Origin: Macrostomum lignano
Taxonomy: Eukaryota
Reading direction: 5' to 3'
NCBI GenBank assembly: GCA_002269645.1
Contig: NIVC01002590.1
Span: 95,416-159,415 of the forward strand
Length of the DNA stretch: 64,000 bases
Under the pieces are notes generated by a model. It had not been told where the DNA came from and ran no database searches. It saw nothing but the letters and a program-made list of their open reading frames with translations. Positions within the stretch are counted from its first letter, which is position 1; each line of letters opens with the position of its first letter. Of the stretch, positions 28,891 through 56,548 are shown one piece after another. Made by a program: the position numbers and the translations under genes.

Positions 28891-29399
28891 GTGAACGGTT
28901 TTACGATGCAGATTATTGAAATGGAGCACTATCGTTCGCCATAAAAAACATAGTTACATTCTTTAATTGTAATACGAAAATAATACTACTGGATATTGTA
29001 AACTCTACCTGTAGATAGCGGCATGTAGACACCTATATAGAAGTCTAAATTTTATCCGTTTTTCCCAACGCTGCCCGCTTCATCTGCTTCAAGCGCACTT
29101 GTAGATGTACTGCTTTTCATTTTTCATTGCATTTCACTTTGCTGTACAGAAAATATCTACAGACGACTTGTATTTTCGTAGAAAGAGTTTCATATTTTCA
29201 TATCATAAAAGGAAAAATAGCAAGGCGTTTCATTTTATAACACTAATTACAACTCGATTAATTTCGGTTTCTTAACCATTTATAGTAACAAATTTTTCGC
29301 TGGCGTGCAATCTTCTATTTTGAATCGAAAAGTGCAGAAAAGTGCATCCAGCTAGGTACGAAGTAGAGAGCATATGGGACACCAGAGTGGCATGAAAGG

Positions 29400-30365
29400 A
29401 CAGTGGGGGCGCCAGGGGAGGACAGTGAGGGCGCCAGGGGAGGACAGTGGGGGCGCCAGGGGAGGACAGTGGGGGCGCCAGGGGAGGACAGTGAGGGCGC
29501 CAGGGGAGGACAGTGGGGGCGCCAGGGGAGGATAGTGGGGGTGCCAGGGGAGGACAGTGGGGGCGCCAGGGGAGGACAGTGGGGGCGCCAGGGGAGGACA
29601 GTGGGGGCACCAGAAGGGAACAGTGGGGCGCCAGGGAGGACAGTGGGGCGCCAGGGGAGGACAGTGGGGGCGCCAGGGGAGGACAGTGAGGGCGCCAGGG
29701 GAGGACAGTGGGGGCGCCAGGGGAGGACAGTGAGGGCGCCAGGGGAGGACAGTGGGGGCGCCAGGGGAGGATAGTGGGGGCGCCAGGGGAGGACAGTGGG
29801 GGCGCCAGGGGAGGACAGTGGGGGCGCCAGGGGAGGACAGTGGGGGCACCAGAAGGGAACAGTGGGGGCGCCAGGGGAGGACAGTGGGGGCGCCAGGGGA
29901 GGACAGTGGGGGCGCCAGGGGAGGACAGTGAGGGCGCCAGGGGAGGACAGTGGGGGCGCCAGGGGAGGACAGTGAGGGCGCCAGGGGAGGACAGTGGGGG
30001 CGCCAGGGGAGGATAGTGGGGGTGCCAGGGGAGGACAGTGGGGGCGCCAGGGGAGGATAGTGGGGTGCCAGGGGAGGACAGTGGGGGTGCCAGGGGAGGA
30101 CAGTGGGGGCGCCAGGGGAGGACAGTGGGGGCGCCAGGGGAGGACAGTGGGGGCGCCAGGGGAGGACAGTGGGGGCACCAGAAGGGAACAGTGGGGGCGC
30201 CAGGGGAGGACAGTGGGGGCGCCAGGGGAGGACAGTGAGGGCGCCAGGGGAGGACAGTGAGGGCGCCAGGGGAGGACAGTGGGGGCGCCAGGGGAGGACA
30301 GTGAGGGCGCCAGGGAAGGACAGTGGGGGCGCCAGGGGAGGACAGTGGGGGCGCCAGGGAAGGAC
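29400..30365. repeat. 22-bp G-rich minisatellite GGGGAGGACAGTGGGGGCGCCA
   Basis: About 43 tandem copies. Confidence 0.95.
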
Positions 30366-30634
30366 AGTGGAAGTCAGGGAATGCTGTCTATTGGATTAAA
30401 ATGAGAAGTAGTTTCTTACTTTATCGGTAATTTACTAGCAAAATGCATTATCGAAGCAGAATGAAATCATGAACTTGAACGCACAATACGCTCATAATGC
30501 ATGGCTGAGATTGTTAGCTTTTTTAAGCTGCACATGTATGTATAGTTAGGAATAAACTATAGGACTAGACTAAACTAAACTATAGTTAGAATAGCAATTC
30601 TGGGTTACAAATAGAGGCAATGATTTAGGGATGT

Positions 30635-30865
30635 TCAGTCAGGACGCACTTGGCATCGGAGCGGCAGGTGCCGACTTTGGCAACAAGCTGGGGCAGCGGC
30701 AGCGGCTGGGGAGGCCGGCCGGCTGCGGTGCCGCCGGTAGCGATTGCGGCGATCCTTAGCGGTGACGGCACAGCGGGTGAAACAGCGACGAAGCGTCTCC
30801 TCGCTGACCTGGCGGGGCGACGGAGTGGGGAGAGTGAAGACATCAACAGACAGACAGAGACAGAC

Positions 30866-30906
<41 letters not shown>

Positions 30907-31095
30907 GACAGAAAGAGACAGACAGACAGACAGAGACAGAAAGAGACAGACAGACAGAGACAGACAGACAGACAGACAGACAGAGACAGACAGACAGACA
31001 GAGACAGACAGACAGACACAGACAGACAGACAGACAGACAGACAGATAGAGACAGACAGAGACAGACAGACAGAGACAGAAAGAGACAGACAGAC

Positions 31096-31174
<79 letters not shown>

Positions 31175-33196
31175 GGCAGGCAGACAGGCAGGCAGTCTCT
31201 AACAACGCACTTGCGCAGCGCCGCAGGTAAGCACAGAGCACTGCCTCGCCACCTCGGCCAGCTTGGTCCGGTCAGCAGGCAGGAGGCTGCCCCGGCCCGT
31301 GAAGGAGGTGACGCTCAGTTCGCGCGGACTGAACAGCGCCCTGATGAGGGCGCGCACCAAAGCGTCGGTCCGTTTGGCGCTGCGCTCGGCAGAGAAACGG
31401 CGGGCGGCGGTGGAGACAGCGTGGTTCCGAGCCCATTCGTGCTGTTGTCGCGGCCGCGGAGGCGGGGGCAGCTGAATGGGCTGCTGACTCTGGTCCCGGC
31501 TGTACAGCGGCAGCTTCTGAGACAGGTAAGGAGGGAGGGAGGTGTAGCTGGCGTTGCATTCCCTCTGTAGCTGGAATCCATTCTGTAGCTGGCATCCCCT
31601 CTGTAGCTGGAATTCACCCTGTAGCTGGCATCTCTCTGTAGCTGGAATTCACCCTGTAGCTGGCATCCACTCTGTAGCTGGAATCCACTCTGTAGCTGGC
31701 ATCTCTCTGTAGCTGGCATCCCCTCTGTAGCTGGCATCCACTCTGTAGCTGGAATCCACTCTGTAGCTGGCATCTCTCTGTAGCTGGCATCCCCTCTGTA
31801 GCTGGCACTGGCATCCCCTCTGTAGCTGGCACTGGCATCCCCTCGGTAGCGTGCACATCCTCTGTTGCTGGCATCCACTCTGTAGCTGGCATCTCTCTGT
31901 AGCTGGCATTCCCTCTGTAGCTGGCACTGGCATCCCCTCTGTAGCGTGCACATCCTCTGTAGCTAACATCCTCTGTTGCTGGCATCCACTCTGTAGCTGG
32001 CATCTCTCTGTAGCTGGCATTCCCTCTGTAGCTGGCACTGGCATCCCCTCTGTAGCGTGCACATCCTCTGTAGCTGGCATCCACTCTGTAGCTGGCATCT
32101 GTCTGTAGCTGGCATCAGCTCTGTAGCGTGCACATCCTCTGTAGCTGGCATTCCCTCTGTAGCTGGCATCCCCTCTGTAGCTGGCATCTCTCTGTAGCTG
32201 GCATCCACTCTGTAGCTGGCATCCACTCTGAAGCTGGAATCCACTTCTGTAGCTGGCATCTCTCTGTAGCTGGCATCTCTCTGTAGCTGGCATCAGCTCT
32301 ATAGCTGGCATCTCTCTGTAGCTGGCATCAGCTCTGTAGCGTGCACATCCTCTGTTGCTGGCATCCACTCTGTAGCTGGCATCCCCTCTGTAGCTGGCAC
32401 TGGCATCCCCTCTGTAGCGTGCACATCCTCTGTAGCTGGCATCTCTCTGTAGCTGGCATTCATTCTGTAGCTGGCATCTCTCTGTAGCTGGCATCAGCTC
32501 TGTAGCTGGCATTTATTCTGTAGCTGGCATCTCTCTGTAGCTGGCATTCATTCTGTAGCTGGCATCTCTCTGTAGCTGGCATCAGCTCTGTAGCTGGCAT
32601 TCATTCTGTAGCTGGCATTCATTCTGTAGCTGGCATTCATTCTGTAGCTGGCATTCATTCTGTAGCTGGCATTCATTCTGTAGCTGGCATCTCTCTGTAG
32701 CTGGCATCAGCTCTGTAGCTGGCAACCTCTCTGTAGCTGGCGCCCATTTGAAGATATTCAGGGCAGACGGGAAATTCGAAAGCAGCTTTAATGCTGTTAC
32801 AAGTCCCAATACGAGAGCTGCGACTTCGCAGCTTCAGACAGCCACTCACCATGGAGCAAGCTTCCGAATCTTCAACACTAGAATCACCAGCTGTGATTCT
32901 AGTGAATGACCAGCTCTTTCACTGCCCCCGATTCTCCATCCCCATTGAAGTCTATCAGCTGATTGTCTTAAACAGCAGACGAGTGCGAAGATGAAACCGA
33001 GAGGCTGGCACAGTTGGAGTACTTGGCAGCCAGGAGTTGCAGATCGGAGGAAACCCCGGCAGCCAGTTGACGAAGCGCAGCCAACTCGCGGCGCGCGGCT
33101 GTCAACTCCGATTGGAGGGCGGAGCAGCGCTGGCAAGCACCGCTGCTGGCGGGGGGAGTGGCTGAGCCTGAAATCTGAATTGTTGTTAGGAAGAGC
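30635..33196 (-). CDS. BEN-domain protein with N-terminal coiled coil (5' exon structure only partly resolved)
   Basis: Phase-consistent exons 32890-32850, 31516-31211, 30808-30635 encode [54 protein letters not shown], a BEN-domain pattern. An upstream exon around 33000-33196 encodes the coiled coil [18 protein letters not shown], but its splice link is unresolved. Confidence 0.6.
30845..31195. repeat. (GACA)n/(GA)n microsatellite in last BEN-gene intron
   Basis: Tetranucleotide run. Confidence 0.95.
31560..32740. repeat. ~17-bp CTCTGTAGCTGGCATC(C/T) minisatellite in BEN-gene intron
   Basis: About 65 variant copies. Confidence 0.95.
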
Positions 33197-40104: not shown

Positions 40105-40380
40105 TCACTGACACATCAACTGACACAGCTACTGACACTATAACTGACACAGCTACCGACACTATAACTGACACAGCTACTAACACTTTAACTGACACAG
40201 CTACTAACACTTTAACTGACACAGCTACTGACACATCAACTGGCATGGCTACTGACACAACTACTGGCATAGTTACTGACACTATAACTGACACTTTAAC
40301 TGACACAGCTACTAACTGTAACAGTAACAGCTTCACATGTAACAGCTTCTGTAACAGCTTCACATAAAACTGACACTAAA
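40105..40380. repeat. ACTGACACAGCT-type repeat
   Basis: Degenerate tandem units sharing the CTGACACA core. Confidence 0.8.
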
Positions 40381-40435: not shown

Positions 40436-43400
40436 TCAATTCAAATTGTGCTTCTCCCGCAGCTGCCACGCCATCTCGAGCAGTTTCAGCCGCTCATCGG
40501 CATCATCAATATGATAGGCAGCCAGATCGGCCAGTGACAAACGGCTGGGCGCGCTCACCACGTTCGGGAACTGGGTGTGGCCCGGCAGCGCCCTGTGCGT
40601 GTCCCTGAACACCCGGTCAGCAATGGCGTTCAGCAGCCTCCAGGGCAGGAGCGACTCCCGGCGTTCCTGCTCGCTTCGCTCCGAGCTGCAAGCGCTGCGC
40701 AGGCAGCTAAGGAGGGCTCGAACTCCGAACGAGCCCGAGCTGCTGCCGGCCAGAGCTACCTGGCTGGCGCCGGCTGAGTACAACCGGAAATAGTCCGGAC
40801 TCTCCAGGATCTGCGGAAAGGGGCGGACGGACTCTTCAGGCTAATATTGCCTGTGTCTACCCTAATCTCCTAATCCCCCATTCCTCACCTAATCCCCCAT
40901 TCCTCTTCTAATCCTCCCATTCCTCTCCTAATCCCCCATTCCTCTTCTAATCCCCCATTCCTCTCCTAATCCCCCATTCCTCTCCTAATCCCCATTCCTC
41001 TCCTAATCCCCATTCCTCTCCTAATCCCCATTCCTCTCCTAATCCCCATTCATCTCCTAATCCCTTCAATTCCTCTCCTAATCCCCCATTCCTCTCCTAA
41101 TCCCCCATTCCTCTCCTAATCCCCCATTCCTCTCCTAATCCCCTCAATTCCTCTCCTAATCCCCTCAATTCCTCTCCTAATCCCCCAAATTCCTCTCCTA
41201 ATCCCCCAAATTCCTCTCCTAATCCCCCATTACTCTCCTAATCCCCCATTACTCTCCTAATCCCCCATTACTCTCCTAATCCCCCATTACTCTCCTAATC
41301 CCCAATTCTACGTAATAAGTCTACTCAATCCTCAACCCGGACATAAGCAGCGGATTCGGCAGCCAGCGACGCACCGGCAGGCTGGGCGCGACTCCCATCG
41401 TCAAGTTGTCGGCAGTTCGGCAGGCGTCGTAGAAGCCGAGCAGGAGGCGCCGGCCGCTCTGCTGGTGCACCGGCAGCGCCTCGAACAGCGGCCTGACCAA
41501 TTCGGCGTCGATATCGACGGAGCCGCCGCCGGGCAGCACGAACAGGTTGCGACCGATGGTGTTGGCGTCCTGGCTGGACACCGACAGCTCGCCGTGGCCG
41601 TCCACCAGCAGTAGCGCCTGCACCGGGTGGCCTTCGGTGGTTTTGAATTGGATAAAGTTTTGCATTGGCATATCGGTCAGGAAAATTCGAAAACTAGAAG
41701 GACCCGTTGGAAAAGTTATGCACCTGCAGAGGCATAAAAGGTGAGCGAGGTGCACAAAAGAGGCACTTTGGTGGCCTATTTCGTGCGTGCTTTGGAAATG
41801 CACCTGAGTGCACCTTTTATGCCTAAATGTCACCAATATATCTGAAAAGAGGCATGAAAGGTGTACAATCGGTGAAGTGGTCAGGCAGTAGGTGAATTCT
41901 CAATTTTGATTGGTTGCGGCGGTAGGGGCAGGAAAGGTGCATAAGGGGCACTGGAGGTGCGCAAAAGGTGAACAGTAGGCTCACAAGCGAGGCACAGCAG
42001 GTGCAGGAAAGGTTCTGAAGGGGCGCAGAAAGTGCACAAAAGGTGAATTGAGGTGCATAAGGTGTACATGTTGCAGCGTAAATATGTATACAGGTGCATT
42101 TCCAAAACACGCTCGAAATAGACCCCCAAAGTGCCTCTTCTGAGCACCTCGCTCACCTTTCATGCCAATGCACGAATTAACGCATTAATAATCAGCAACA
42201 AAAAATTAACTGAGAGTTACATACTCGTACATTGCACGCACAGATTGAACATAGAAAAGATTTATTTACACTCATACTAATCGCTGCTATCCCCTTCCTG
42301 ATCCTGACAAACCACGAAAGCAAACATTTCCTGTACTGATAAGTTTTAATAACTTTCAAATACTCAGGAAAAGTTCCAAAAAGTAGTGAAAAGTTTTGAA
42401 TCTGTTCAAAGAATAGTAAGGAAAAGTAGCAAAGAACTTTCGCAAGTTGAAACGCCCCTTGCATTGCCTCTACGCCTAAAGTGCCCATTGTGCACCCTTT
42501 ATTCACCTTTCGTGCCTCCAGTGCACACTGTACACTTTTTATGCACCTCCACCGCAGCGCACCTTTTTTTCACCTTTCACTCCACCAATGCCCCCAATTC
42601 CTACTTTGTTCACCTTTTGTGCCTTCAATGCACACTGTGCACCTTTAATGCACCCAATTCCCCTACGACACCTGTGCCCCTACCGCCTATTTCATGCCTT
42701 AAATTCACCTTTTGACCCTGCAGAGGCACTCAGGTGAACACGCGGTGCACAAGTGGCACAAAATAGGCATAAGAGAGGCGAAAGTGAGGCAGAAGGTGCA
42801 AAACTCTTCACCTTTCGTGCCTACTTTAAAAACTCAAAATCCAACGGGGGACAGCTGAAAGTACTAACAATCGCTGCCGCCAGCTTCCCTTAGCAATTCG
42901 CAGAAGTCGGCAACCACGGCCAGCAGGGCTTCCTTGGCGTCGCCGGAGTCGCCGCGGGCCCAGTCGCAGCAGACGATTGTCTGGTAGCCCAGCAGTTGCA
43001 GAGCGCCCGCTACCTGGCGCAGTTCGCCGGGCACGCATGGCAGATCGCCGCACTCGTAGCGACTGGCGCCAATGAGAAGGGCGAACTTGCGCCACGCCGG
43101 CTGAGCGACCGTGACCAGGCGATTAGCCGCGAATATCGAGAAGAAATCCGTGAGCATCACCAGGTCTGATAAGCGGGTCCTAGTAGCCGAGACCTGGAAT
43201 GTTAAATATGACCATGTTAAGTGACGGATTTTGTAAAACCTGTTTATGATCGGAAATCTGATCTATGACCAGAAAAAATCTATATGACCAGAAAGCCTAT
43301 CTATATGACCAGACAGCCAATCTATATGATCAGAAAGCCTATATGATATCTATATCTATATGATCAGACAGCCGATCTAAATGATCAGACAGCCTATCTA

Positions 43401-45958
43401 TATGATCAGAAAGCCTATATGATATCTATATCTATATGATCAGACAGCCTATCTATATGATCAGACAGCCTATCTATATGATCAGACAGCCTATCTATAT
43501 GATCAGAAAGCCTATATGATATCTATATCTATATGATCAGACAGCCTATCTATATGATCAGACAGCCTATCTATATGATCAGACAGCCGATCTAAATGAT
43601 CAGACAGCCGATCTAAATAATCAGACAGCCGATCTATATGATCAGACAGCCTATCTATATGACCGGGAAGCCAATCCTTGCGACCAGAAAGCCTATCTGT
43701 TACCAGAATGTCGTATGACAGCTCATGCACAGAACGCTGACCTGCAGTTCAGGTAGCTGCTCCTGGTACCGCTCCGCTATCTCCCTGATGGACTTCGACA
43801 CCCCAGTGAGGAAGCTGTCCACCTGCAGTCGTCCCTCGTCGCACAGGTGCTGGCGCAGCTGCGAATTCAAAGCCGAAATGCCGAACGACTGTCGATTCCG
43901 GTTGTGCCTGGCGTTGTCCAGCACGGCAGCCGCGGCGCTGCCGTAGCTGGTGGCGTGCAAGCGGTGGATCTGGCTGCCACGAACTGTCACGCCGAGGTCT
44001 CCGCCCAGGTGCACAGACGGGCAGCTGGCAATACGGCACATGTCCATCATCACCACTAGAAGGCCTTTGTCGCTGCTGTCATCGCATGCCGGTTGCCTGC
44101 GACCAGCCGACATCGCGTGATTGCCAGGCAGGCAGTCGGCCAGAGGCTTGAGGAAGTCCTCCTCGACACGGAGGAAGCTGTCGGGCTGCTCCAGCTTGGC
44201 GTCGATTGGCAGAAAACAGGCGCTGGTGGTGACGCCGTCTGCTTTGTAGTTCTGCAACATGCATGATGTTGTTTCGATATTCGATACATATCGGAACTTT
44301 AAAAGCTTTGTTATACACCGTTAATAAATTAGATACATATCAGTATTTAAATATCTTCAATACATATCGGTACTTAAATAGCTTTAATACATATCGGTAC
44401 TTAAGTAGCTTCGATACATATCAGTACATAAATAGCTTCGATACATATCGGTATTTAAATAGCTTCGATACATATCGGTATTTAAATAGCTTCGATACAT
44501 ATCGGTACTTAAGTAGCTTCGATTACAGAAACAGAACTTCCATATATATCGGCAGGGATAGCTAGGTGCACATACGTTTACGACAGTGCCATGACCATCT
44601 AACAATAGAAACAGGTGCGGCTCCGGCCCGCTCAGAAGTGCCAAAATGTGACGCAGCCGATCGATGGCGCAGAGCAGCTTTGCCCGGCTCGGATCCATCA
44701 GACGGAGGGTCCGGTAGCCCAGCTTGCGAAGGTAGTCCTCCAATTGGTCGAGCTCTCTTGTATTACCGCAACCAAGCCCCGGCATGTGCTTGTAGCTCTG
44801 GCAGCTAACTATCAGGGCGTATTTGTGCGTTCGCTCCATGTCGATAGGCAGCGGGCCCTTCGGCTTGATGTCTGGCACTGCCTGCAGCATTGGAGGCGCA
44901 GGTTGGATGCAGGGTTGCGACAAAAATGCGACTTAAGAAAGACTTAATTACTAAAGGTAGGAAGACAGGGCATTGCACTTCCTAGAAATATTTTTAAAGG
45001 CCGAGTAGGAGTTGTAGTAGCTTGCAAAATATTTAATTTCCTATTTACGTAGTAAATTCTTTGCGCAGAACTACTATTACTACTACTACTACTACTACTA
45101 CTATTACTACTACCACCACTACTAGTACTAAGTATTAGACTTACACGCGGCAAATGTGGCCTTGCCCGAACTTTCAGGCTGAACATCGCGTATGGTCGAG
45201 AACTGACGGGCAGCTGGTTGGCGAGTTGCACTGCGCAACGGTACTGGCCCTGCGGGGGTAGTTAAAGTACATGTGTACACATACAATAGATATGATTATT
45301 TGTCTTCATTATAGGCAGTCTCTTCACTTACTTGATCAGTCAGCGCCACTTGCTTAATACGCAGGTGAACACCGGTGCAGAGCACCTCATCACTGAGCGC
45401 CTTGTGCCAGGACACGCTGGCTATGGCAGCAAACTGTTCTCCAAGGGTAACACCAAACAATGCCACGCCGCCTTCATCAACTTCCAAGGTGCGACTGGCT
45501 GGTAGTAGTCTTTCAAACAAGCCGACGGGCTGCTGCTGTTGCTGCTGCTGCTGTGGTGGCTGAGGCGCCGGCGGGTTGATGCCGCGAGCGGCGGCGGCGG
45601 CAGCTTCAGCAGCGAAGCCCATGGCGGCGAGCACCTCAGCAGACTCAGGTATCCGGCGGAGCACGGAGACCAGATGGGCCAGGGTGGCGCCGCGCCGCTG
45701 GCCCATTCTTAGCAGGGCGTCGTGCGCCAAATCGATAGAATTGCTGCCAGTCTTGGCCTCGAGCTCCAGGATCTCCGTCTGCTTCAGAAAGAAGGGCATC
45801 ACGCGTTTGATGAGCGGATCGCCTGGCGGGACGCCTAACTTGGTGTATAGCGTGTGAAACTGTCCACCTGGCAGGTGCTGCAGCATGAGCTGATGCGCGT
45901 TCATTTGCCTGACGGGTCTCTGCTGCGGCTGCGGCTGCTGCGGGAGCGCGGAAACCAT
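40436..45958 (-). CDS. MALT1-like paracaspase: death domain, one Ig domain, two tandem paracaspase domains (7 exons, ~834 aa)
   Basis: Exons 45958-45332, 45249-45145, 44881-44576, 44251-43742, 43193-42869, 41631-41375, 40810-40436 are phase-consistent. The acceptor of exon 6 could alternatively be 41617. Death domain LLRMGQRRGATLAHLVSVLRRIPESAEVL. Ig SWHK..DQGQYRC. Domain 1 KYALIV/LLDGHG/MMDMCR. Domain 2 KFALLIG/LVDGHG/FYDACR. Confidence 0.85.
40860..41310. repeat. ~18-19 bp CTCTCCTAATCCCCCATTC minisatellite in paracaspase intron 6
   Basis: About 24 tandem copies. Confidence 0.95.
41720..42820. mobile_element. Foldback/MITE-like nested inverted repeats in paracaspase intron 5
   Basis: About 41730-41810 is the reverse complement of about 42090-42167. 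About 41915-41985 is the reverse complement of about 42600-42690. Confidence 0.5.
43260..43700. repeat. 21-bp CTATATGATCAGACAGCCTAT minisatellite in paracaspase intron 4
   Basis: About 20 variant copies. Confidence 0.9.
44275..44545. repeat. 27-bp GATACATATCGGTACTTAAATAGCTTC minisatellite in paracaspase intron 3
   Basis: About 9 copies. Confidence 0.9.
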
Positions 45959-47099: not shown

Positions 47100-48765
47100 A
47101 AGATAACCAAGATTTTCTAGCAAAATGTAATCAAAATCCTGTCGACAGGATCAGAATCCCTACAGACAGGATCAGAATCCCTACAGACAGGATCAGAATC
47201 CCTACAGACGGGATCAGAATCCCTACAGACAGGATCAGAATCCCTACAGACGGGATCAGAATCCCTACAGACAGGATCAGAATCCCTACAGACAGGATCA
47301 GAGTCCCTACAGACAGGATCAGAATCCCTACAGACAGGATCAGAACCCCTACAGACAGGATCAGAATCCCTACAGACAGGATCAGAACCCCTACAGACAG
47401 GATCAGAATCCCTACAGACAGGATCAGAATCCCTACAGACAGGATCAGAATCCCTACAGACAGGATCAGAATCCCTACAGACAGGATCAGAATCCCTACA
47501 GACAGGATCAGAATCCCTACAGACAGGATCAGAATCCCTACAGACAGGATCAGATCCCTACAAACAGGATCAGAACCCCTACAGACAGGATCAGAATCCC
47601 TACAGACAGGATCAGAACCCCTACAGACAGGATCAGAATCCCTACAGACAGGATCAGAATCCCTACAGACAGGATCAGAATCCCTACAGACAGGATCAGA
47701 ATCCCTACAGACAGGATCAGAATCCCTACAAACAGGATCAGAATCCCTACAGACAGGATCAGAATCCCTACAGACAGGATCAGATCCCTACAAACAGGAT
47801 CAGAACCCCTACAGACAGGATCAGAATCCCTACAGACAGGATCAGAACCCCTACAGACAGGATCAGAATCCCTACAGACAGGATCAGAATCCCTACAGAC
47901 AGGATCAGAATCCCTACAGACAGGATCAGAATCCCTACAGACAGGATCAGAATCCCTACAAACAGGATCAGAACCCCTACAGACAGGATCAGAATCCCTA
48001 CAAACAGGATCAGAATCCCTACAGACGGGATCGGAATCCCTACAGACAGGATCAGATCCCTACAGACAGGATCAGAATCCCTACAAACAGGATCAGAACC
48101 CCTACAGACAGGATCAGAATCTCAATAGACAGGATCAGAATCACTACAGACAGGATCAGAATCACTACAGACAGGATCAGAATCCCTACAGACAGGATCA
48201 GAATCCCTACAGACGGGATCGGAATCCCTACAGACAGGATCAGATCCCTACAGACAGGATCAGAATCCCTACAAACAGGATCAGAACCCCTACAGACAGG
48301 ATCAGAATCTCAATAGACAGGATCAGAATCACTACAGACAGGATCAGAATCCCTACAGACGGGATCGGAATCCCTACAGACGGGATCGGAATCCCTACAG
48401 ACAGGATCAGAGTCCCTACAGACAGGATCAGAATCCTTACAGACGGGATCAAAATCCCTACAGATAGGATCAGTCCCTAAAGACAGGATTAGAGTCCCTA
48501 CAGACAGGATCAGAATCCCTACAGACAGGATCAGAGTCCCTACAGACAGGATCAGAATCTCAACAGACGGGATCAAAATCCCTACAGATAGGATCAGAGT
48601 CCCTACAGACGGGATCAAAATCCCTACAGATAGGATCAGAGTCCCTACAGACAGGATCAAAATCCCTACAGACAGGATCAGAGTCCCTACAGACAGGATC
48701 AGAATCCCTACAGACAGGATCAGAGTCCCTACAGACAGGATCAGAGTCCCTACAGACAGGATAGA
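47100..48765. repeat. 21-bp ACAGACAGGATCAGAATCCCT satellite
   Basis: About 80 copies between the SMIM8 stop and the paracaspase start. Confidence 0.95.
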
Positions 48766-49623: not shown

Positions 49624-52572
49624 TTAGGCGAGCCTGTCGTCCAGACTCTGAATCTCGCCATTGGACAATTCGGCAACAAGTTGAGCAGGTTGAAAATCAA
49701 AGTGCTGATGCTTCACTACCTGCCAAATTTGGTTGGAAATCGAAAGTTCTGTTTATACTAATATAAGTAGTATTATTGCAATATTTTCCGTCCATACCTC
49801 GTTACCCCAGCTGGACCAGCCAGGTGTGAGATTTCTGGCAAACAGTTCGAGGCATCGATAATCGTCTGAGCCAAACAGTGCGTTGAGCAGCGCTGTGGGC
49901 AAGGGATTTTATGGCTCTATCAGATGATAGTGCAACTCATATTTTAATTTTCTATCGGTAGAAACTTGAACTTTCTCCAATTAGAGCAATGGCCATCGAC
50001 AATTATCACCTGTATGCATCACACTCACCCTTACACCGGACTAATTAGAGCAATAGCCACCCAATAATTATCAACTGTATATTACTCACCCTTACCTGGA
50101 CTAATTAGAGCAATAGCCACCCAATAATTATCACCTGTATATTACTCACCCTTACCTGGACTAATTAGAGCAATAGCCACCCAATAATTATCACCTGTAT
50201 ATTACTCACCCATTACACCGGACTAATTAGAGCAATAGCCACCCCATAATTATCACCCGTGTACATTACTCATCACTACACCTGACCAACTACCTAATAT
50301 CCTACTAATAATCGGAGCAATAATGCCGGACTTAAATAACTCACGCTTCAAACACGGCTTCCTTGAGTGCAGGCAAGACGGCACGGACATCAGAGTGAGC
50401 TCGGCGGGCACGCGTTTATAAACGTCGGATGACGCTGCAAGCTGGGCGGGCGCCAGCACGTAAAGCCGTTCGAAAGGCCGGCGAAATCTGCTGTGCAGTG
50501 GGGTCAGCGGTCGCCCCGTAGCGGTCACCTGCTCAAGAGTCAGCGGAATGGGCAGCTTCTGCGAATACGTTTATTACTGTTAACCATGTCGATCGAACCG
50601 GCTGACCCACCTTGACCCACAGCCAACGGCCGATGCAGCGCAGGCCCCAGGCAGCGGTCAGGTCTTCTAGCACGCAGCGCACATGCTTCAGCGAGTTGGT
50701 GCACCAGACCAGCACCAGAGGCCCCGGCCACCCCTTCGCTCCTCCCCCTGACTGTTCAGCTCGATGACGCAGCAACTCCGGCACGGGTATTCGCGACAGA
50801 AGCTCGAGCCCGATGGACTCAGCGGCAGAATAGACTCCGCGCCTGCGTGCCGACGCGTTTGGCCAGGGCGGGTCGGCCAGCACAACGTCGTAGGGCCCGT
50901 CCGATGAGCTCAGCTGGAGCAGCAGAGGCTTGGCGCTGCACAGCTGCGAGATGGCGAACGAGCTGCGAGCCGGCACAGCATAGCAACCGCCTAGCAAGCG
51001 AACTGCTCGCCGTTGGCTGACGCTGGGCTCAACAAGAGCAACCCGGCCGAAACGGCAAGCGTCGGCCAGAGCAGCGCCCGGGCCGCAGTCGGTGCCAGAG
51101 TTGAACAGCTCAAACAGGGCCGTCTGGCTCTCAATGCCGCAGATGGAGCGAAGCTGGCCAGCCTCAGTTAGCGTCAGGAAGCTGACCAGCCCGGACTGAG
51201 TAGCTAGGGACAGCCGGCCTTCAATTGATGCCACTGAGAATGCGGACTGGGCAAGCCGGATGATGGACGAGTTTGTCCTTTATAAGTACACTGAGTTATT
51301 TCATTTATAAGTACACTGACTTCTTTCGTTTAAGTACACTGAGTTCTTTCATTTATAAGTACACTGAGTTCTGAGGTCTACGCACTACGCTCGTAGTTTG
51401 AGGATCTTTGGGATTTACAACACAAATTTGAGGATTTTTGGGGATTAGAGCACTAGTTTGATCTTTGGGGATTACAGCATTAGTTTGAGGATCTTTGGGG
51501 ATTACAACACTAGTTTGAGGATTATAGGGGATTACAACACTATTTTGAGGATTATAGGGGATTCCAGCACTAGTTTGAGGATTATAGGGGATTCCAGCAC
51601 TAGTTTGAGGATTAAAGGGGATTCCAGCACTAGTTTGAGGATCTTTGGGAATTATAGCACTATTTTGAGGATTATAGGGGATTTCAGCACTAGTTTGAGG
51701 ATTATAGGGGATTCCAGCACTAGTTTGAGGATTATAGGGGATTCCAGCACTAGTTTGAGGATTAAAGGGGATTCCAGCACTATTTTGAGGATTATAGGGG
51801 ATTTCAGCACTAGTTTGAGGATTATAGGGGATTCCAGCACTAGTTTGAGGATCTTAGGGGATTATAGCACTATTTTGAGGATTATAGGGGATTTCAGCAC
51901 TAGTTTGAGGATCTTTGGGGATTACAGCACTAGTTTGAGGATCTTTGGGGATTCCAGCACTAGTTTGAGGATCTTTGGGATTCCAGCACTAGTTTGAGGA
52001 TCTTTGGGGATTACAGCACTAGTTTGAGGATCTTTGGGGATTCCAGCACTAGTTTGAGGATCTTTGGGATTCCAGCACTAGTTTGAGGATCTTTGGGGAT
52101 TACAGCACTAGCTTGAGGATCTCTGGGGATTACAGCACTACTTTGAGTATATTTAGGGATGACAGGGCTAATTTAAGGATCTTTGGAATGATAGCACTGC
52201 CTTGGGGATCTCGTTTTGGCAGCACTATACTTAAATAAATGAATTATAGAGCCTACATCATCAGACTCGCCACTGTCCGTGTGATCTTCTACAAAACCAG
52301 CCGCAGCGGCCTTGCGTTTCCTTGATTTGGCAGGTTTTTCACGTTCGGGCTCTACAAAACATTATTGTGTGCATTAAATATGCATACTATTCTACTGATT
52401 CATTCTATTCAGTAGCGAATGCGTATATCTTACCATCGTTATACAACGGGTCTAGAATAAGATATTCCAAGTCGGATATTGATTTTGCTTCCTTCAAGTT
52501 CCGAAGATGCCGGAGGGTCTGGCGCAGGAAAGTCGTCTCCAGCTGCAGCCTGGCATCGCTGGAAGCTTCTGC
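49624..52572 (-). CDS. METTL4: N6-adenine methyltransferase METTL4/DAMT-1 (MT-A70 family), 6 exons
   Basis: Phase-consistent exons 52572-52434, 52351-52257, 51246-50611, 50528-50345, 49892-49798, 49719-49624. Motifs YDVVLADPPW, LVWCTN..KH, WLWVKVT..G, RPFE, SVP..HSRKP, LELFARNL..GWSSWGNE. Confidence 0.9.
49975..50300. repeat. 60-bp tandem repeat in METTL4 intron 4
   Basis: CTAATTAGAGCAATAGCCACCCAATAATTATCACCTG.. about 5 copies. Confidence 0.9.
51400..52190. repeat. 30-bp AGCACTAGTTTGAGGATCTTTGGGGATTAC minisatellite in METTL4 intron 2
   Basis: About 25 variant copies. Confidence 0.95.
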
Positions 52573-53633: not shown

Positions 53634-56548
53634 TCAGCGCTCCTTACGATGCCTCTTGTCCTTCTCTTTTTTCTCTTTCTTTTCCTTCTTGTGCTTCTTG
53701 TGCTTCTTCTTGCCGCCGTCTCGGTCGCTTTTGCCCGAATCTAGCTTCTCGAGCTTCTTCATCAGCTTCTCGCGCTGGGCAGGCGTCAGCGAGCGAAAGA
53801 AGGCCTCAACCTCGGCTTCGCTGCTGGCCGATGCGCCGCCGCCGGCGACGACTTCGTTGTAGCCGGAGGCCTCGGCCCGGCGGGTGAAGCGCAGGTGCTG
53901 CTCGTCGCGCATGTGCCGGCCGGCGTCGCCAAGATGAGAGTCGGGCAGCTGCGGCTCCATGGTGATGGACTTGCCATACAGCGGGCACAGCCGGTCGGTG
54001 TTCACGTGGCCCCAGCTGTGGCATTTCACGCAGCGCACGTTGCGCACCTCGATGCCAAACGGCTGGTCGCGGACCTCGTCGCTGCCTTTGCAGTAGGCCT
54101 CTCTGGGCGCCTGGAATTTGCGCTGCCATTCGAAGCGAACCTCGCGAGCCTCGCTGGGGCCGGCCTCCTCCTGCGGGACCGGGGGGTGTGATTGGTTAGA
54201 TTAGCTAATTAATAGAGTTCCACTGTAGCTATGGATAATAGCGACAGAAACTAATGGATATGGTTAAGTCCCTGAGGTTGAGGACTCAATATTTGTAATC
54301 CCATATTCACATGATGTTAAGGTAATTGTTAAGATGAATGTTTTCACTTTCAATGTGATGAGGTCTTAAATGTGAATTTTAATGATAATTGCATCAATAC
54401 AATGTTCTATTGCGAAGCAGTGGAAAAGCAATAAATATTAATTCAGTAAATTATTCACTTAAGAACTGATTTAAATGCCATTTCAAGATATAACCAAGAT
54501 GCTTTTTGACACCAATATACTGCTTTGCCTGCATCAAAAAAGTGTAAACTTCAATCACTGCTATCCAGACCAGACACAGACTGTCTCAAAACTTTTAGCA
54601 AAACCCCTTAATTCATTTTAGCAAACTTTTAAACTTTCAAACTTAGAATGACTATGCCCATACAAATTATAGGAAGCAAACAAAAACTCATTATATCCCA
54701 GACTCTGGATGGTATTAGTACATAAGGGGCCTAGTATATCCTTTGGTATATAGCCTGGCATGCAGAGATTGCCAAGAAAGCAAGTGGGACCAAAGTTTCA
54801 AGTCAATGTAATCAATGTATATACTTAGTATACAAAATGACTAAGTTCAACTTTGGCATAGTCTTTATATGCATAGTCATAGTTATAGTAGCTAAATTTT
54901 GATCAAAAAGAATAGCTCCTATGGATCTTTAAAAGTTATTAACAAAAAACAAAATAAAAAATCATGTTTAATTCTATATTTTTAATTCTATATTCCAGAA
55001 GGTATATATTATGTCATGCCAGAATTTCTAGTATATATTTGGTTTGGCCAAAAAAATTGGCATGCCTTTTGGTTAAGCAAAAAATAAGGTATGCTATGCC
55101 ATGGAATAGCTTGATAGCATATAATATAATATAGTATGATCATAGTGGGGCAGTGTTTTTGAGTTTTGGAAAATACTTATAAATATATTTTATCTTGTTT
55201 ATTTTTACTAGAAATACCAAAGAGTACCGAAAAAATTTATAATTTAATTTAATGCTTATATTTCTAGTTATACATTTTTAAAGCTTTGTTTTTTCTTGTG
55301 CATTTTTAAAATGTAATTTTTGCATATATTTTTGCTTTTTTGTGGGGCTATTGTTAATTATTTCAATGGTATATGTGGCATAAAGTTGGTAAACATGGCA
55401 TGCAATAGGTGTACAAACAAAAAATGCTAGGTATATATTCTAGCAAGCAATTAACATGATCTGGAATATGGCAAAAATGGTTAAAAGATAGTTCTTCATG
55501 GTTCAGTATAAAAATAACCAATTTTTACTAATGATTTTTGGCAATCCTCTAGTTTTGTATGGTAAATTATTTTTATTGAAAATGATAACCTTTAAATAAC
55601 TTTCAGCTTGATAAGTGATAAGATAGATAATAGAGAACAAATTTAACATATTATCAAATGCCTACTTTTGTTTAAATATGTATAAATGATATTCTTTTCT
55701 AGCTTATCAATAGCTGCCTAACCATGCTATCATCAATTTTTGACTGCATTTTGTAAACCCAGTGGACCTAACTATTTACATTAATATTATTGAAGGCACA
55801 TAGATAGGCTCATGAAAAAACTAATTATATTATAGACTAGTTGAGTCCTACTTATAGAAATACCTTTGGCAGCACCAGTTCCTAAACAAGACCTTCAGGA
55901 ACTTTTTATATACTGGGTATTATATTATTATCAACTTTAGTTTAACATCCATTAATATTGTTTATATATGTTTAGGGCCTAAACAAAAGTCTTAAAACAA
56001 AAACATAAGTTTAAACAAAACAAAAGGCCTAGGCACTCAATAATATGATAAGTTTGTTCTCTATTATCTATTTTGTTATTTATTGAGCTTAAAGTTACAT
56101 AAAAGTTATTATTTTCAACAAAAAATTAAATGTGTCTAAATTATTAAGATGCCTCCATATAATATAAAAATTTAAAAAATACATTAGCAATGCTTTATAA
56201 TGAAATTTTATTATAGACTCTAGTAGTCGAACTAAATGTTTTGACAGATTACGAAAGAAAAAAATAGGTCTAGGTCTAATTATATATAACAATGTAAAAA
56301 ATGTTTACCTTATCAGCACCAGGGGGCCTATCATACATGAAAGCAATTCCAAGCTTTGCTTTTTCATCTCCTAAAATGGCTCGAGCTTCAAGCTGCTCTT
56401 GCTCTCGACGATAAAGAGCGACTTTTTCTTCTTCCTTTTTTTCCTCGAATTCCTTTTTCTGCTGTGCCATCCATAAACGTTTAATATTGTCGAAGCTTCC
56501 TGGGTGGAAGAACTTCTTGTTCATATAATTTTGATAACCTTTGCCCAT
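53634..56548 (-). CDS. CIR1: Corepressor interacting with RBPJ 1 (CIR1), 2 exons, ~258 aa
   Basis: Exons 56548-56309 and 54170-53634, phase 0. N-terminal MGKGYQNYMNKKFFHPGS..NIKRLW..FMY..PPG and DQPFGIEVRNVRCVKCHSWGHVNTDRLCP are diagnostic CIR1 motifs. Confidence 0.9.

What the first reader, a model, noticed from the sequence alone, without database searches (positions are those of the whole stretch)
40436..45958. Paracaspase with two tandem catalytic domains in one chain (DD-Ig-PCASP-PCASP)
Seen: seven phase-consistent exons give a ~834-aa protein. A MALT1-like death domain and one Ig domain precede paracaspase domain 1 (KYALIV..LLDGHG..MMDMCR..QLPELQVSATRTRLSDL, dyad about H341/C418). A second complete domain follows (KFALLIG..LVDGHG..FYDACR..QFPNVVSAPSRLSLADL, about H637/C695), and the protein ends at LEMAWQLREKH with no Ig3. 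Known: MALT1/type-1 paracaspases have one catalytic domain, usually two N-terminal Igs and a C-terminal Ig3, and are activated by dimerisation. Inference: this may be a covalently pre-linked heterodimer, or a dual-specificity or self-processing protease. It also lacks the Ig3 domain that follows the W580 helix. I know of no described example, but could not search.
Basis: partly seen in the sequence, partly recalled or inferred. Interest (0 to 1): 0.92.

Follow-up and report, generated by a model that had tools for sequence, protein, structure and literature searches.

The report
Flatworm paracaspase-like protein, two protease domains
A real, RNA-supported gene of the flatworm Macrostomum lignano encodes one chain with a helical N-terminus, one Ig domain and two caspase-fold protease domains that both keep their catalytic His/Cys pair; this layout has been described for true caspases but, as far as I could find, not for MALT1-like paracaspases.

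Summary
Window 45958-40436 (minus strand) holds seven GT..AG exons that give an 834-aa protein. From residue 9 onward it is identical to GenBank PAA56689.1 (Macrostomum lignano BOX15_Mlig034005g1, "hypothetical protein"). Pfam finds Peptidase_C14 twice.

The GenBank model comes from an RNA-seq-based pipeline that cuts transcripts at spliced-leader and poly(A) peaks. It leaves both domains in one mRNA in all three paralogous loci.

Domain 1 is a recognisable homologue of the MALT1 protease domain (hhalign 94%, E 1e-7). Domain 2 is an old, diverged copy: 24% identity to domain 1, closer to a bacterial caspase-like domain, and not linked directly to MALT1. One Ig fold is supported. The "MALT1-like death domain" is only weakly suggested, and the "W580 helix" is not supported. 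Ig3 is absent.

AlphaFold failed (pLDDT 36-40), so packing of the two domains is untested. The intramolecular-dimer idea remains an inference. The same idea was already proposed for caspase-16 and fits coral caspase-X, where the N-terminal copy is catalytically dead.

Verdict: real, undescribed, a new variant of a known kind, and moderately interesting.

The parts
40436..45958 (-). Whole coding region: seven exons, 834 codons plus stop. This is M. lignano gene BOX15_Mlig034005g1.
45332..45958 (-). Exon 1 (aa 1-209): N-terminal helical region, Ala/Gln-rich linker and the first part of the Ig domain.
   Evidence: protein identity to PAA56689.1.
45935..45936 (-). AG immediately upstream of the annotated mRNA 5' end (45934). 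It is a probable spliced-leader acceptor. The M. lignano leader ends in ATG, which would be in frame (M-PQPQQRPV...).
   Evidence: Searches give the position. PMC8629364 gives the leader sequence. Use of this acceptor is inferred, not seen.
45584..45904 (-). aa 19-125: predicted six-helix region, a possible death-fold domain.
   Evidence: Helices appear in both AF2 runs, but at pLDDT 31-58. 11 of 42 non-significant Foldseek hits are death domains. Local alignment to the human MALT1 death domain gives z 2.5. hhalign gives P 0.012 and probability 3.5%. There is no Pfam hit. Inconclusive.
45145..45511 (-). aa 150-244: a single Ig-like domain, spanning the end of exon 1, intron 1 and exon 2.
   Evidence: Pfam V-set, I-set and Ig_3 are sub-threshold, E 0.004-0.08. 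A library-wide hit to an Ig-repeat protein has E 1.1e-5. Foldseek gives Ig hits at E 3e-5 to 1e-3, including MALT1 Ig2 3bfo. UniProt names the protein 'Ig-like domain-containing protein'.
45145..45249 (-). Exon 2 (aa 210-244).
44576..44881 (-). Exon 3 (aa 245-346): start of protease domain 1 through the LLDGHG motif.
43742..44251 (-). Exon 4 (aa 347-516): remainder of domain 1 up to ...QLPELQ.
43161..44851 (-). Protease domain 1 (aa 255-527, with introns 3 and 4), a C14 domain homologous to the MALT1 paracaspase domain.
   Evidence: Pfam 41.4 bits. hhalign against a vertebrate MALT1 profile gives probability 94.3%, E 1e-7, 186 columns. BLASTP to MALT1 gives E 4e-6.
44591..44593 (-). Codon of H341, the catalytic His of domain 1 (= MALT1 H415).
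44036..44038 (-). Codon of C418, the catalytic Cys of domain 1 in the motif MMDMCR (= MALT1 LLDMCR, C464). D416 corresponds to D462.
43194..43741 (-). Intron 4 (548 nt, mostly a 21-nt minisatellite). It interrupts the last strand of domain 1 (PELQ|VSATR). It contains no AATAAA or ATTAAA.
42869..43193 (-). Exon 5 (aa 517-624 plus one base). One open frame carries the end of domain 1 (VSATRTRLSDL), the linker of about 22 aa and the first third of domain 2.
   Evidence: This exon is the physical link between the two domains.
43095..43160 (-). Linker between the domains (aa 528-549, VMLTDFFSIFAANRLVTVAQPA).
40541..43094 (-). Protease domain 2 (aa 550-800, with introns 5 and 6), a diverged C14 domain.
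   Evidence: Pfam 21.3 bits, E 2.3e-4 when scanned alone. BLASTP to domain 1 gives E 7.5e-9. BLASTP to the bacterial caspase-like domain P0009 gives E 7e-15. Library-wide, P0009 has E 1.9e-5.
41594..41596 (-). Codon of H637, the catalytic His of domain 2 (LLVDGHG).
41420..41422 (-). Codon of C695, the catalytic Cys of domain 2 (FYDACR). D693 corresponds to MALT1 D462.
41375..41631 (-). Exon 6 (aa 625-710).
40436..40810 (-). Exon 7 (aa 711-834 plus stop): end of domain 2 and a 34-aa helical tail. There is no Ig3.

Best explanation
SHOWN.
- This is a genuine gene of the flatworm Macrostomum lignano, present in three near-identical paralogous copies.
- It encodes one chain of about 830 aa: an N-terminal helical region, one Ig-like domain, and two caspase-fold (Peptidase C14) domains in tandem joined by a linker of about 22 residues.
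- Both domains keep the catalytic His and Cys, the Asp two residues before the Cys (D-x-C-R, as in MALT1) and an acidic residue at the position of MALT1 D365.
- Domain 1 is homologous to the MALT1 paracaspase domain.
- Domain 2 is an ancient, strongly diverged relative of domain 1 that looks more like bacterial caspase-like domains.

INFERRED.
- The gene descends from a type-1 (death domain-Ig-protease) paracaspase.
- That ancestor lost one N-terminal Ig and the C-terminal Ig3, and gained a second protease domain by old internal duplication or fusion.
- MALT1 and apical caspases become active only when two protease domains dimerise. The tandem pair therefore most likely packs as an intramolecular (pseudo-)dimer. 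This would replace intermolecular dimerisation and the Ig3/ubiquitin control.
- The N-terminal part would serve as the recruitment module.
- It is undetermined whether both sites cut or one domain mainly supports the other. S1 specificity may differ from MALT1, because the E500 equivalent is Ala (domain 1) or Gln (domain 2).
For: Gene and single chain:
- Exon model.
- Identity to PAA56689.1 and to two 824-aa paralogs.
- The loci are all annotated as one gene.
- The annotation is built from RNA-seq with explicit cutting at spliced-leader and poly(A) peaks (PMC5730564).
- The end of domain 1 and the start of domain 2 share exon 5.
- Intron 4 has no poly(A) hexamer.

Constraint:
- All three copies keep intact ORFs and all GT..AG sites.
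- In the protease region there are 7 synonymous and 3 non-synonymous differences.
- Exons 4-7 are 98.9-100% identical without indels. Introns 4 and 6 are about 90-94% identical with many indels, and the interior of intron 5 is unalignable.

Domains:
- Pfam finds C14 twice.
- Domain 1 versus domain 2 gives E 1e-8.
- Domain 1 versus the MALT1 profile gives 94% probability.
- A profile of domain 1, domain 2 and the bacterial homologue hits MALT1 first in the PDB, at E 5e-7.
- The Ig fold is supported.

Mechanism by analogy:
- MALT1 is activated by dimerisation without cleavage (PMC3304489).
- Ig3 is auto-inhibitory, and K644 ubiquitination stabilises the dimer (PMC4713714).
- The same intramolecular-dimer reasoning is published for caspase-16 (PMC12198278).
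Against: - No structural evidence for packing: both AlphaFold runs had mean pLDDT of 36-40.
- Domain 2 is not linked directly to MALT1. hhalign gives 4% probability, and a vertebrate-MALT1 HMM scores it at -1.8 bits.
- A profile of domain 1 and domain 2 alone finds no PDB relative, so the MALT1 hit leaned on the bacterial sequence.
- The death domain is unproven.
- E500 is not conserved in either domain. The dimer-interface Glu (MALT1 E549) is kept in domain 1 (E514) but is Asn in domain 2 (N793).
- I saw no RNA reads myself. Three UniProt models of 538-539 aa stop at the exon-5 donor.
- No orthologue outside M. lignano was found, so conservation across species is unknown.
Confidence: 0.5

Rival explanations
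1. The chain is real, but only one domain is a working protease. The other is a pseudo-protease that activates or regulates it. This is the arrangement in caspase-16, coral caspase-X and the caspase-8/FLIP(L) heterodimer, except that here the dyad has not (yet) been lost.
For: - Every described tandem caspase has one dead copy (PMC12198278 and PMC4715348).
- Domain 2 is only borderline for Pfam and lacks the E549 equivalent.
- Both domains lack the E500 equivalent.
- Domain 1 carries an insert of about 20 aa between His and Cys.
Against: - Both domains retain His, Cys, the Asp at -2 and the D365-equivalent acid.
- Domain 2 shows 4 synonymous and 2 non-synonymous differences among paralogs, and its exons are far better conserved than its introns.
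- A dyad kept through a divergence as deep as 24% identity argues for use.
Confidence: 0.3
2. The two domains work independently, like beads on a string. They would be two proteases with different specificities, each still needing an intermolecular partner or a platform. Alternatively the chain is cut in the linker into two enzymes.
For: - The domains are only 24% identical and differ in putative S1 residues (A455 versus Q727).
- The linker and the end of domain 1 contain several Arg residues (ATRTRLS, AANRL, PAWRK) that could serve an Arg-directed protease. This comes from inspecting the sequence.
Against: - There is no evidence of processing.
- The short linker of about 22 residues holds the domains close together.
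- Dimerisation-driven activation is the rule for the nearest characterised relatives.
Confidence: 0.12
3. It is not a paracaspase derivative. It is a lineage-specific metacaspase/orthocaspase-like C14 protein that happens to carry an Ig domain, so the MALT1 resemblance is generic C14 similarity.
For: - A whole-library phmmer search finds no animal paracaspase. The only C14 hit is a bacterial TPR-caspase.
- Domain 2 is closer to that bacterial domain (58.9 bits) than to domain 1 (41.6 bits) or MALT1 (about 20 bits).
- Single-sequence PDB searches miss MALT1.
- The death domain is unproven.
- The last strand reads Q-x-P, as in the bacterial homologue, not Q-A-L as in MALT1.
Against: - Domain 1 matches the MALT1 family profile at 94% probability, E 1e-7, over 186 columns. 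It has no BLASTP match to the bacterial domain.
- Domain 1 has the motif DMCR, as MALT1 does.
- An Ig domain N-terminal to a C14 domain is, to my knowledge, the type-1 paracaspase signature (PMC5978004).
- The weak hits to the N-terminus are death domains.
Confidence: 0.2
4. The single chain is an annotation artefact. Two adjacent genes, or an operon-like pair resolved by spliced-leader trans-splicing at the exon-5 acceptor, have been merged.
For: - M. lignano has many polycistronic precursors.
- The exon-5 acceptor is in phase 0, so the leader's ATG would be in frame there too. This is my inference.
- Some database models are truncated.
Against: - The conserved C-terminal strand and tail of domain 1 (VSATRTRLSDL, matching SAPSRLSLADL of domain 2) is encoded on exon 5, in the same frame as domain 2.
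- Without exon 5, domain 1 would end in a 14-residue read-through peptide.
- The TBONE pipeline cuts at experimentally seen leader and poly(A) peaks, and it did not cut in any of the three loci.
- The truncated models end at intron 5, inside domain 2, not between the domains.
- Intron 4 has no poly(A) hexamer.
Confidence: 0.06

Closest known systems
MALT1 / type-1 paracaspases (PCASP1-3 and invertebrate homologues such as C. elegans MALT-1)
   Same: - An N-terminal non-catalytic module is followed by Ig and a C14 protease domain.
- Domain 1 is homologous to the MALT1 protease domain.
- The His/Cys dyad, the D-M-C-R motif, the D365-equivalent acid and the E549-equivalent Glu are kept in domain 1.
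   Different: - There are two protease domains instead of one.
- There is one N-terminal Ig instead of two.
- There is no Ig3 and no C-terminal extension.
- The E500 equivalent is lost in both domains.
- The death domain is not demonstrable by sequence.
- Divergence is extreme: single-sequence searches miss MALT1.
Mammalian caspase-16 (PMC12198278) and Acropora millepora caspase-X (PMC4715348)
   Same: Two caspase-fold domains sit in tandem in one polypeptide. For caspase-16 an intramolecular dimer, analogous to caspase-8/FLIP(L), has been proposed.
   Different: - These are true caspases, not paracaspase-like.
- In both, the N-terminal copy has lost His and Cys. In the flatworm protein both copies keep the dyad.
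- The flatworm protein also carries an Ig domain.
Caspase-8/FLIP(L) heterodimer
   Same: Two diverged caspase-fold domains pair, and the pairing activates catalysis (PMC7586951, found; discussed).
   Different: The pairing is intermolecular, FLIP(L) has no catalytic Cys, and the family is Asp-specific.
Bacterial caspase-like (orthocaspase/metacaspase-like) domains, e.g. the TPR-caspase P0009
   Same: This is the best sequence relative of domain 2: 31% identity over 199 aa, E 7e-15 pairwise and 1.9e-5 library-wide. It shares the motifs ALxIG, GHG, DACR and Q-x-P.
   Different: It is bacterial, has a single domain and is fused to TPR repeats. It retains the acidic residue at the E500 position (D469), which both flatworm domains lack.

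Membership tests
Peptidase C14 (clan CD caspase fold) | Match to the family profile, domain 1 | tested here: met
   PF00656 scores 41.4 bits against a cut-off of 21.4, covering aa 264-520.
Peptidase C14 (clan CD caspase fold) | Match to the family profile, domain 2 | tested here: met
   - Scanned alone it scores 21.3 bits against a cut-off of 21.4 (E 2.3e-4).
- It is counted as the second stretch in the 56.1-bit whole-protein hit.
- Corroboration: BLASTP to domain 1 gives E 7.5e-9, and to a bacterial C14 domain E 7e-15.
- The fold itself is not confirmed structurally, because AF2 failed.
Peptidase C14 (clan CD caspase fold) | Catalytic His and Cys in both domains | tested here: met
   H341/C418 and H637/C695 align with MALT1 H415/C464. 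Activity was not tested.
Type-1 paracaspase (MALT1-like) | N-terminal death domain | tested here: inconclusive
   - No Pfam hit at E <= 10.
- No PDB phmmer hit.
- hhalign against the MALT1 death-domain profile gives 3.5% probability, P 0.012.
- Local alignment gives z 2.5.
- The AF2 helices are low-confidence.
- 11 of 42 non-significant Foldseek hits are death domains.
Type-1 paracaspase (MALT1-like) | Ig domain(s) between the N-terminal module and the protease | tested here: met
   One Ig-like domain lies at aa ~150-244. MALT1 has two.
Type-1 paracaspase (MALT1-like) | Protease domain homologous to MALT1's | tested here: met
   This holds for domain 1 only: hhalign 94.3%, E 1e-7. Domain 2 gives 4.4%, E 0.009, so it is not met directly.
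Type-1 paracaspase (MALT1-like) | Acidic S1 pocket for Arg (MALT1 D365, D462, E500; residue list from my knowledge of the MALT1 structures) | tested here: inconclusive
   Two of three residues are kept in each domain: E287/D416 and E573/D693. The third is A455 or Q727. This rests on alignment only.
Type-1 paracaspase (MALT1-like) | Ig3 domain after the protease domain, as in MALT1 | tested here: not met
   Domain 1 is followed after about 22 aa by domain 2. Domain 2 is followed by 34 aa and then the stop. Similarity of the tail to the MALT1 W580 helix is at chance level.
Type-1 paracaspase (MALT1-like) | A single protease domain per chain | tested here: not met
   There are two C14 domains.
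Tandem-caspase proteins (caspase-16, caspase-X) | True-caspase sequence type, with the N-terminal copy lacking the dyad | tested here: not met
   Both copies keep His and Cys and have D-x-C-R. The best PDB family is MALT1, not the caspases. The feature is as described in PMC12198278 and PMC4715348.

The most novel reading that the evidence does not exclude
A paracaspase that has internalised its own activation step. Two catalytically competent, diverged protease domains would be fused into a permanent intramolecular dimer with two different active sites. It would dispense with Ig3/ubiquitin control and possibly with Arg specificity. This would be the first two-active-site member of the caspase superfamily.
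Probability: 0.2. Interest if true: 0.75.

Novelty: new variant of a known kind. Interest (0 to 1): 0.55.

Why it matters
MALT1 is a drug target whose activity depends on protease-domain dimerisation and on release of Ig3 auto-inhibition. A natural protein in which a MALT1-type domain is covalently paired with a second caspase-fold domain, and which has no Ig3, would be a ready-made model of the dimer-activated state.

It would also extend the tandem-domain theme, recently noticed in caspase-16 and coral caspase-X, to another branch of the superfamily. Here both dyads are retained.

M. lignano supports RNAi and transgenesis (PMC5730564), so function can be tested in vivo. The finding also adds a flatworm data point to paracaspase evolution. 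The surveys I could read do not mention flatworms.

Tried and rejected
1. AlphaFold2 of the full chain with 38 aligned sequences gave mean pLDDT 36. AlphaFold2 of the N-terminal 232 aa gave pLDDT 40. Both are too poor to judge the protease folds or their packing. I used only the Ig part and the pattern of weak hits.
2. Attempts to deepen the alignment failed. Two profile searches timed out. A search with domain 2 alone returned nothing at E <= 10, not even the protein itself, which I cannot explain. The profile that included human MALT1 returned almost only vertebrate MALT1 fragments.
3. phmmer searches of the PDB with the whole protein and with domain 1 alone gave no MALT1 hit. A profile of domain 1 and domain 2 alone gave nothing.
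4. A vertebrate-MALT1-only HMM scored domain 1 at 17.6 bits, domain 2 at -1.8 bits and the bacterial P0009 at 20 bits. It is too narrow to discriminate.
5. NCBIfam gave no hits for either domain.
6. The 'W580 helix' in the tail of domain 2 gave z of about 0 against shuffles, so I rejected it.
7. The death domain could not be shown by BLASTP to a MALT1 homologue with a death domain, by Pfam or by the PDB.
8. Recent horizontal transfer as the origin of domain 2 is rejected. Domain 2 contains two spliceosomal introns, and only one bacterial representative passes E 1e-3, at 31-34% identity.
9. Shared intron positions between domains 1 and 2 would be evidence of exon duplication. None are shared: the introns lie at GHG+5 and in the last strand in domain 1, and at GHG-12 and Cys+15 in domain 2.

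Full report
**1. What is in the sequence**

On the minus strand I rebuilt the gene from the three-frame translation and from the splice motifs. It has seven exons: 45958-45332, 45249-45145, 44881-44576, 44251-43742, 43193-42869, 41631-41375 and 40810-40436. Every intron is GT..AG and the phases agree. Four of the six introns are largely minisatellite.

**2. Where it comes from, and whether it is one gene**

A word-indexed search found one cluster, from Macrostomum lignano. Its members are three GenBank proteins: BOX15_Mlig034005g1, g2 and g3, of 826, 824 and 824 aa. There are also four UniProt models.
- PAA56689.1 (g1) is identical to my translation from residue 9 to the stop. Every splice junction I chose is therefore the annotated one.
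- The window is identical to NIVC01002590.1 across 25.5 kb.

The GenBank annotation of this assembly is not ab initio. It is a genome-guided transcriptome (StringTie/TACO plus a de novo assembly). Its transcriptional units were cut into mRNAs wherever RNA-seq showed spliced-leader or poly(A) peaks (PMC5730564).
- In all three loci the gene was left as one mRNA covering both protease domains.
- The 750-aa UniProt model, from the older assembly, also joins them.
- The sequence itself argues the same way. The conserved end of domain 1 (VSATRTRLSDL; compare SAPSRLSLADL at the end of domain 2) is on exon 5, in one open frame with the linker and the beginning of domain 2.
- Without exon 5, domain 1 would run into a 14-codon read-through.
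- Intron 4 has no poly(A) hexamer.

I did not see reads myself, so this is strong indirect support, not proof.

The annotated mRNA begins at 45934, directly after an AG. The M. lignano spliced leader ends in ATG (PMC8629364), which would be in frame. The mature protein may therefore start M-PQPQQRPV rather than at the genomic ATG at 45958. This is inference.

**3. Constraint**

The three paralogs keep intact reading frames and every splice site. Their protease regions differ at 7 synonymous and 3 non-synonymous sites. In domain 2 the counts are 4 and 2.

Exons 4-7 are 98.9-100% identical and free of indels. By contrast:
- introns 4 and 6 are about 90-94% identical with many indels;
- intron 5 is unalignable except at its ends;
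- the 1 kb downstream is 91.5-94% identical.

The counts are small, but domain 2 is clearly not decaying.

**4. The domains**

Pfam finds Peptidase_C14 with two stretches, 56.1 bits in total. Domain 1 alone scores 41.4 bits. Domain 2 alone scores 21.3 bits, a hair under the 21.4 cut-off.

The two domains are homologous to each other: BLASTP E 1e-8, 24% identity over 289 residues. The signal lies mainly in the His/Cys-bearing halves (z 13). It is weak but collinear in the C-terminal halves (z 1.7).

An exhaustive phmmer search of 1.84 billion representative proteins found only three hits at E <= 1e-3: the protein itself, an Ig-repeat protein matching residues 153-219, and a bacterial TPR-caspase (P0009) matching domain 2. 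The family is therefore an extreme outlier with no orthologue in these collections.

Pairwise scores form a chain:

| Pair | Bits |
|---|---|
| Domain 1 - MALT1 | 29-33 |
| Domain 1 - domain 2 | 41.6 |
| Domain 2 - bacterial domain (P0009) | 58.9 |
| Bacterial domain - MALT1 | 40-42 |
| Domain 2 - MALT1 | ~20 |
| Domain 1 - bacterial domain | not significant |

Profile comparisons sharpen this:
- Domain 1 against an alignment of 22 vertebrate MALT1 sequences gives 94.3% probability, E 1e-7, over 186 columns.
- Domain 2 against the same alignment gives 4.4%.
- A profile of domain 1, domain 2 and P0009 ranks ten MALT1 sequences first in the PDB (E 5e-7). These come ahead of caspase-4/-11 (short matches) and the metacaspases (2e-3).
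- A profile of domain 1 and domain 2 alone finds nothing.

So domain 1 is a MALT1-type domain. Domain 2 is a caspase-fold domain whose subfamily I cannot fix.

No intron position is shared between the two domains, and their identity is low. The second domain therefore arose long ago, by internal duplication or by fusion with another C14 gene. I cannot tell which.

**5. Functional residues**

These come from an L-INS-i alignment, with human numbering checked against the sequences.

| MALT1 | Domain 1 | Domain 2 | Bacterial P0009 |
|---|---|---|---|
| H415 | H341 | H637 | H378 |
| C464 | C418 | C695 | C435 |
| D462 | D416 | D693 | D433 |
| D365 | E287 | E573 | D326 |
| E500 | A455 | Q727 | D469 |
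| E549 (dimer interface, PMC3747146) | E514 | N793 | not read |

Both sites therefore look catalytically equipped, but the S1 pocket is not the MALT1 pocket. The list of S1 residues is from my knowledge of the MALT1 structures, not from a tool.

**6. The N-terminus**

One Ig-like domain (about residues 150-244) is supported by three lines of evidence:
- sub-threshold hits to several Pfam Ig families;
- the library hit to an Ig-repeat protein;
- Foldseek matches of the only moderately confident part of the AF2 model to Ig domains, including MALT1 Ig2.

- no Pfam hit;
- no PDB hit;
- no BLASTP hit to a MALT1 homologue with a death domain;
- hhalign to a MALT1 death-domain profile gives 3.5% probability.

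Three weak observations do point the same way:
- both AF2 runs draw six helices;
- a collinear local alignment to the human MALT1 death domain reaches z 2.5 (the human sequence was verified against 2g7r);
- 11 of the 42 non-significant Foldseek hits are death domains.

I call this inconclusive, leaning yes.

The supposed 'W580 helix' at the C-terminus is no better than chance. There is no Ig3.

**7. Mechanism**

MALT1 and the apical caspases are latent monomers activated by dimerisation of the protease domain (PMC3304489). In MALT1, Ig3 is auto-inhibitory and its mono-ubiquitination stabilises the dimer (PMC4713714).

A chain with two caspase-fold domains about 22 residues apart and no Ig3 is most simply read as an intramolecular dimer. 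The authors of the caspase-16 paper reached the same reading for that tandem caspase and compared it with caspase-8/FLIP(L).

I could not test it. Both AlphaFold jobs were unusable, because no diverse homologues could be gathered.

**8. Novelty**

The sequence is public but is named only 'hypothetical protein' or 'Ig-like domain-containing protein'. Full-text searches found:
- no paper pairing paracaspase with Macrostomum;
- no paper mentioning the gene id;
- no description of a tandem paracaspase.

The paracaspase evolution papers I could read do not mention flatworms or double domains.

Tandem caspase domains are known in caspase-16 and Acropora caspase-X, each with a dead N-terminal copy. 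This is therefore a new variant of a known kind. What is distinctive is the paracaspase-like context and the retention of both dyads.

Noticed in passing
window 45934-45958 (minus strand): The annotated mRNA starts at 45934, right after an AG and 24 nt downstream of the genomic ATG. The M. lignano spliced leader ends in ATG and would be in frame. The true N-terminus may therefore be leader-donated (M-PQPQQRPV...). That would explain why GenBank marks the CDS as 5'-partial.
   Followed up: partly
window 41632-42868 (intron 5): This 1237-nt intron is unalignable with the 800-nt and 441-nt introns of the two paralogs, except for about 35 nt at each end. It contains a 93-nt inverted repeat (41725-41817 / 42080-42172, 85% complementary), which looks like a copy-specific foldback/MITE-like insertion. 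It also holds 2 AATAAA and 2 ATTAAA hexamers. Three UniProt models (538-539 aa) end by reading through the exon-5 donor (...GGSDC*), so a short isoform truncated inside domain 2 is conceivable.
   Followed up: partly
L003 10680-10784 (exon 2 of paralog g2) versus window 45145-45249: The exon encoding the last strands of the Ig domain carries 5 non-synonymous and 0 synonymous differences in paralog g2. Together with D190A in exon 1, these are D190A, V224G, P228A, A230V and H241T (the last a two-base change). The protease exons are almost unchanged. The Ig surface may be evolving fast or be relaxed in that copy.
   Followed up: no
window 40866-41308, 43264-43673, 44332-44523, 45070-45130, 40107-40313: Minisatellites fill much of introns 2, 3, 4 and 6 and the 3' flank. 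Their units are 19, 21, 27, 3 and 12/24 nt. Introns 1 and 3 are 100% identical between paralogs, whereas introns 4-6 differ strongly. This hints at patchy gene conversion.
   Followed up: partly
window 49624-52545 and 53634-55934 (minus strand; L001 3390-6311 and 1-2301): Upstream on the same strand lie genes with Pfam MT-A70 (an m6A-methyltransferase-like protein, 405 aa) and Cir_N. The order Cir_N, MT-A70, paracaspase-like gene is conserved in all three paralogous loci. A 159-aa gene with no Pfam hit lies downstream at window 30635-31516.
   Followed up: no
window 976-2861, 17627-19178, 29397-30370, 47144-48762: These are long, strand-biased G-rich or purine-rich minisatellite arrays (for example a 9-nt unit x94, 23-nt units x44 and x68, and a 21-nt unit x77). 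They account for the strong GC skew at the start of the window. This is typical of the repeat-rich M. lignano genome.
   Followed up: no
(search tool behaviour): A search of the 5.8-billion-protein collection with domain 2 alone returned no hit at E <= 10. It did not even return the M. lignano proteins that contain domain 2, although the full-length query found them. This is unexplained and is probably an effect of the candidate-selection step.
   Followed up: no
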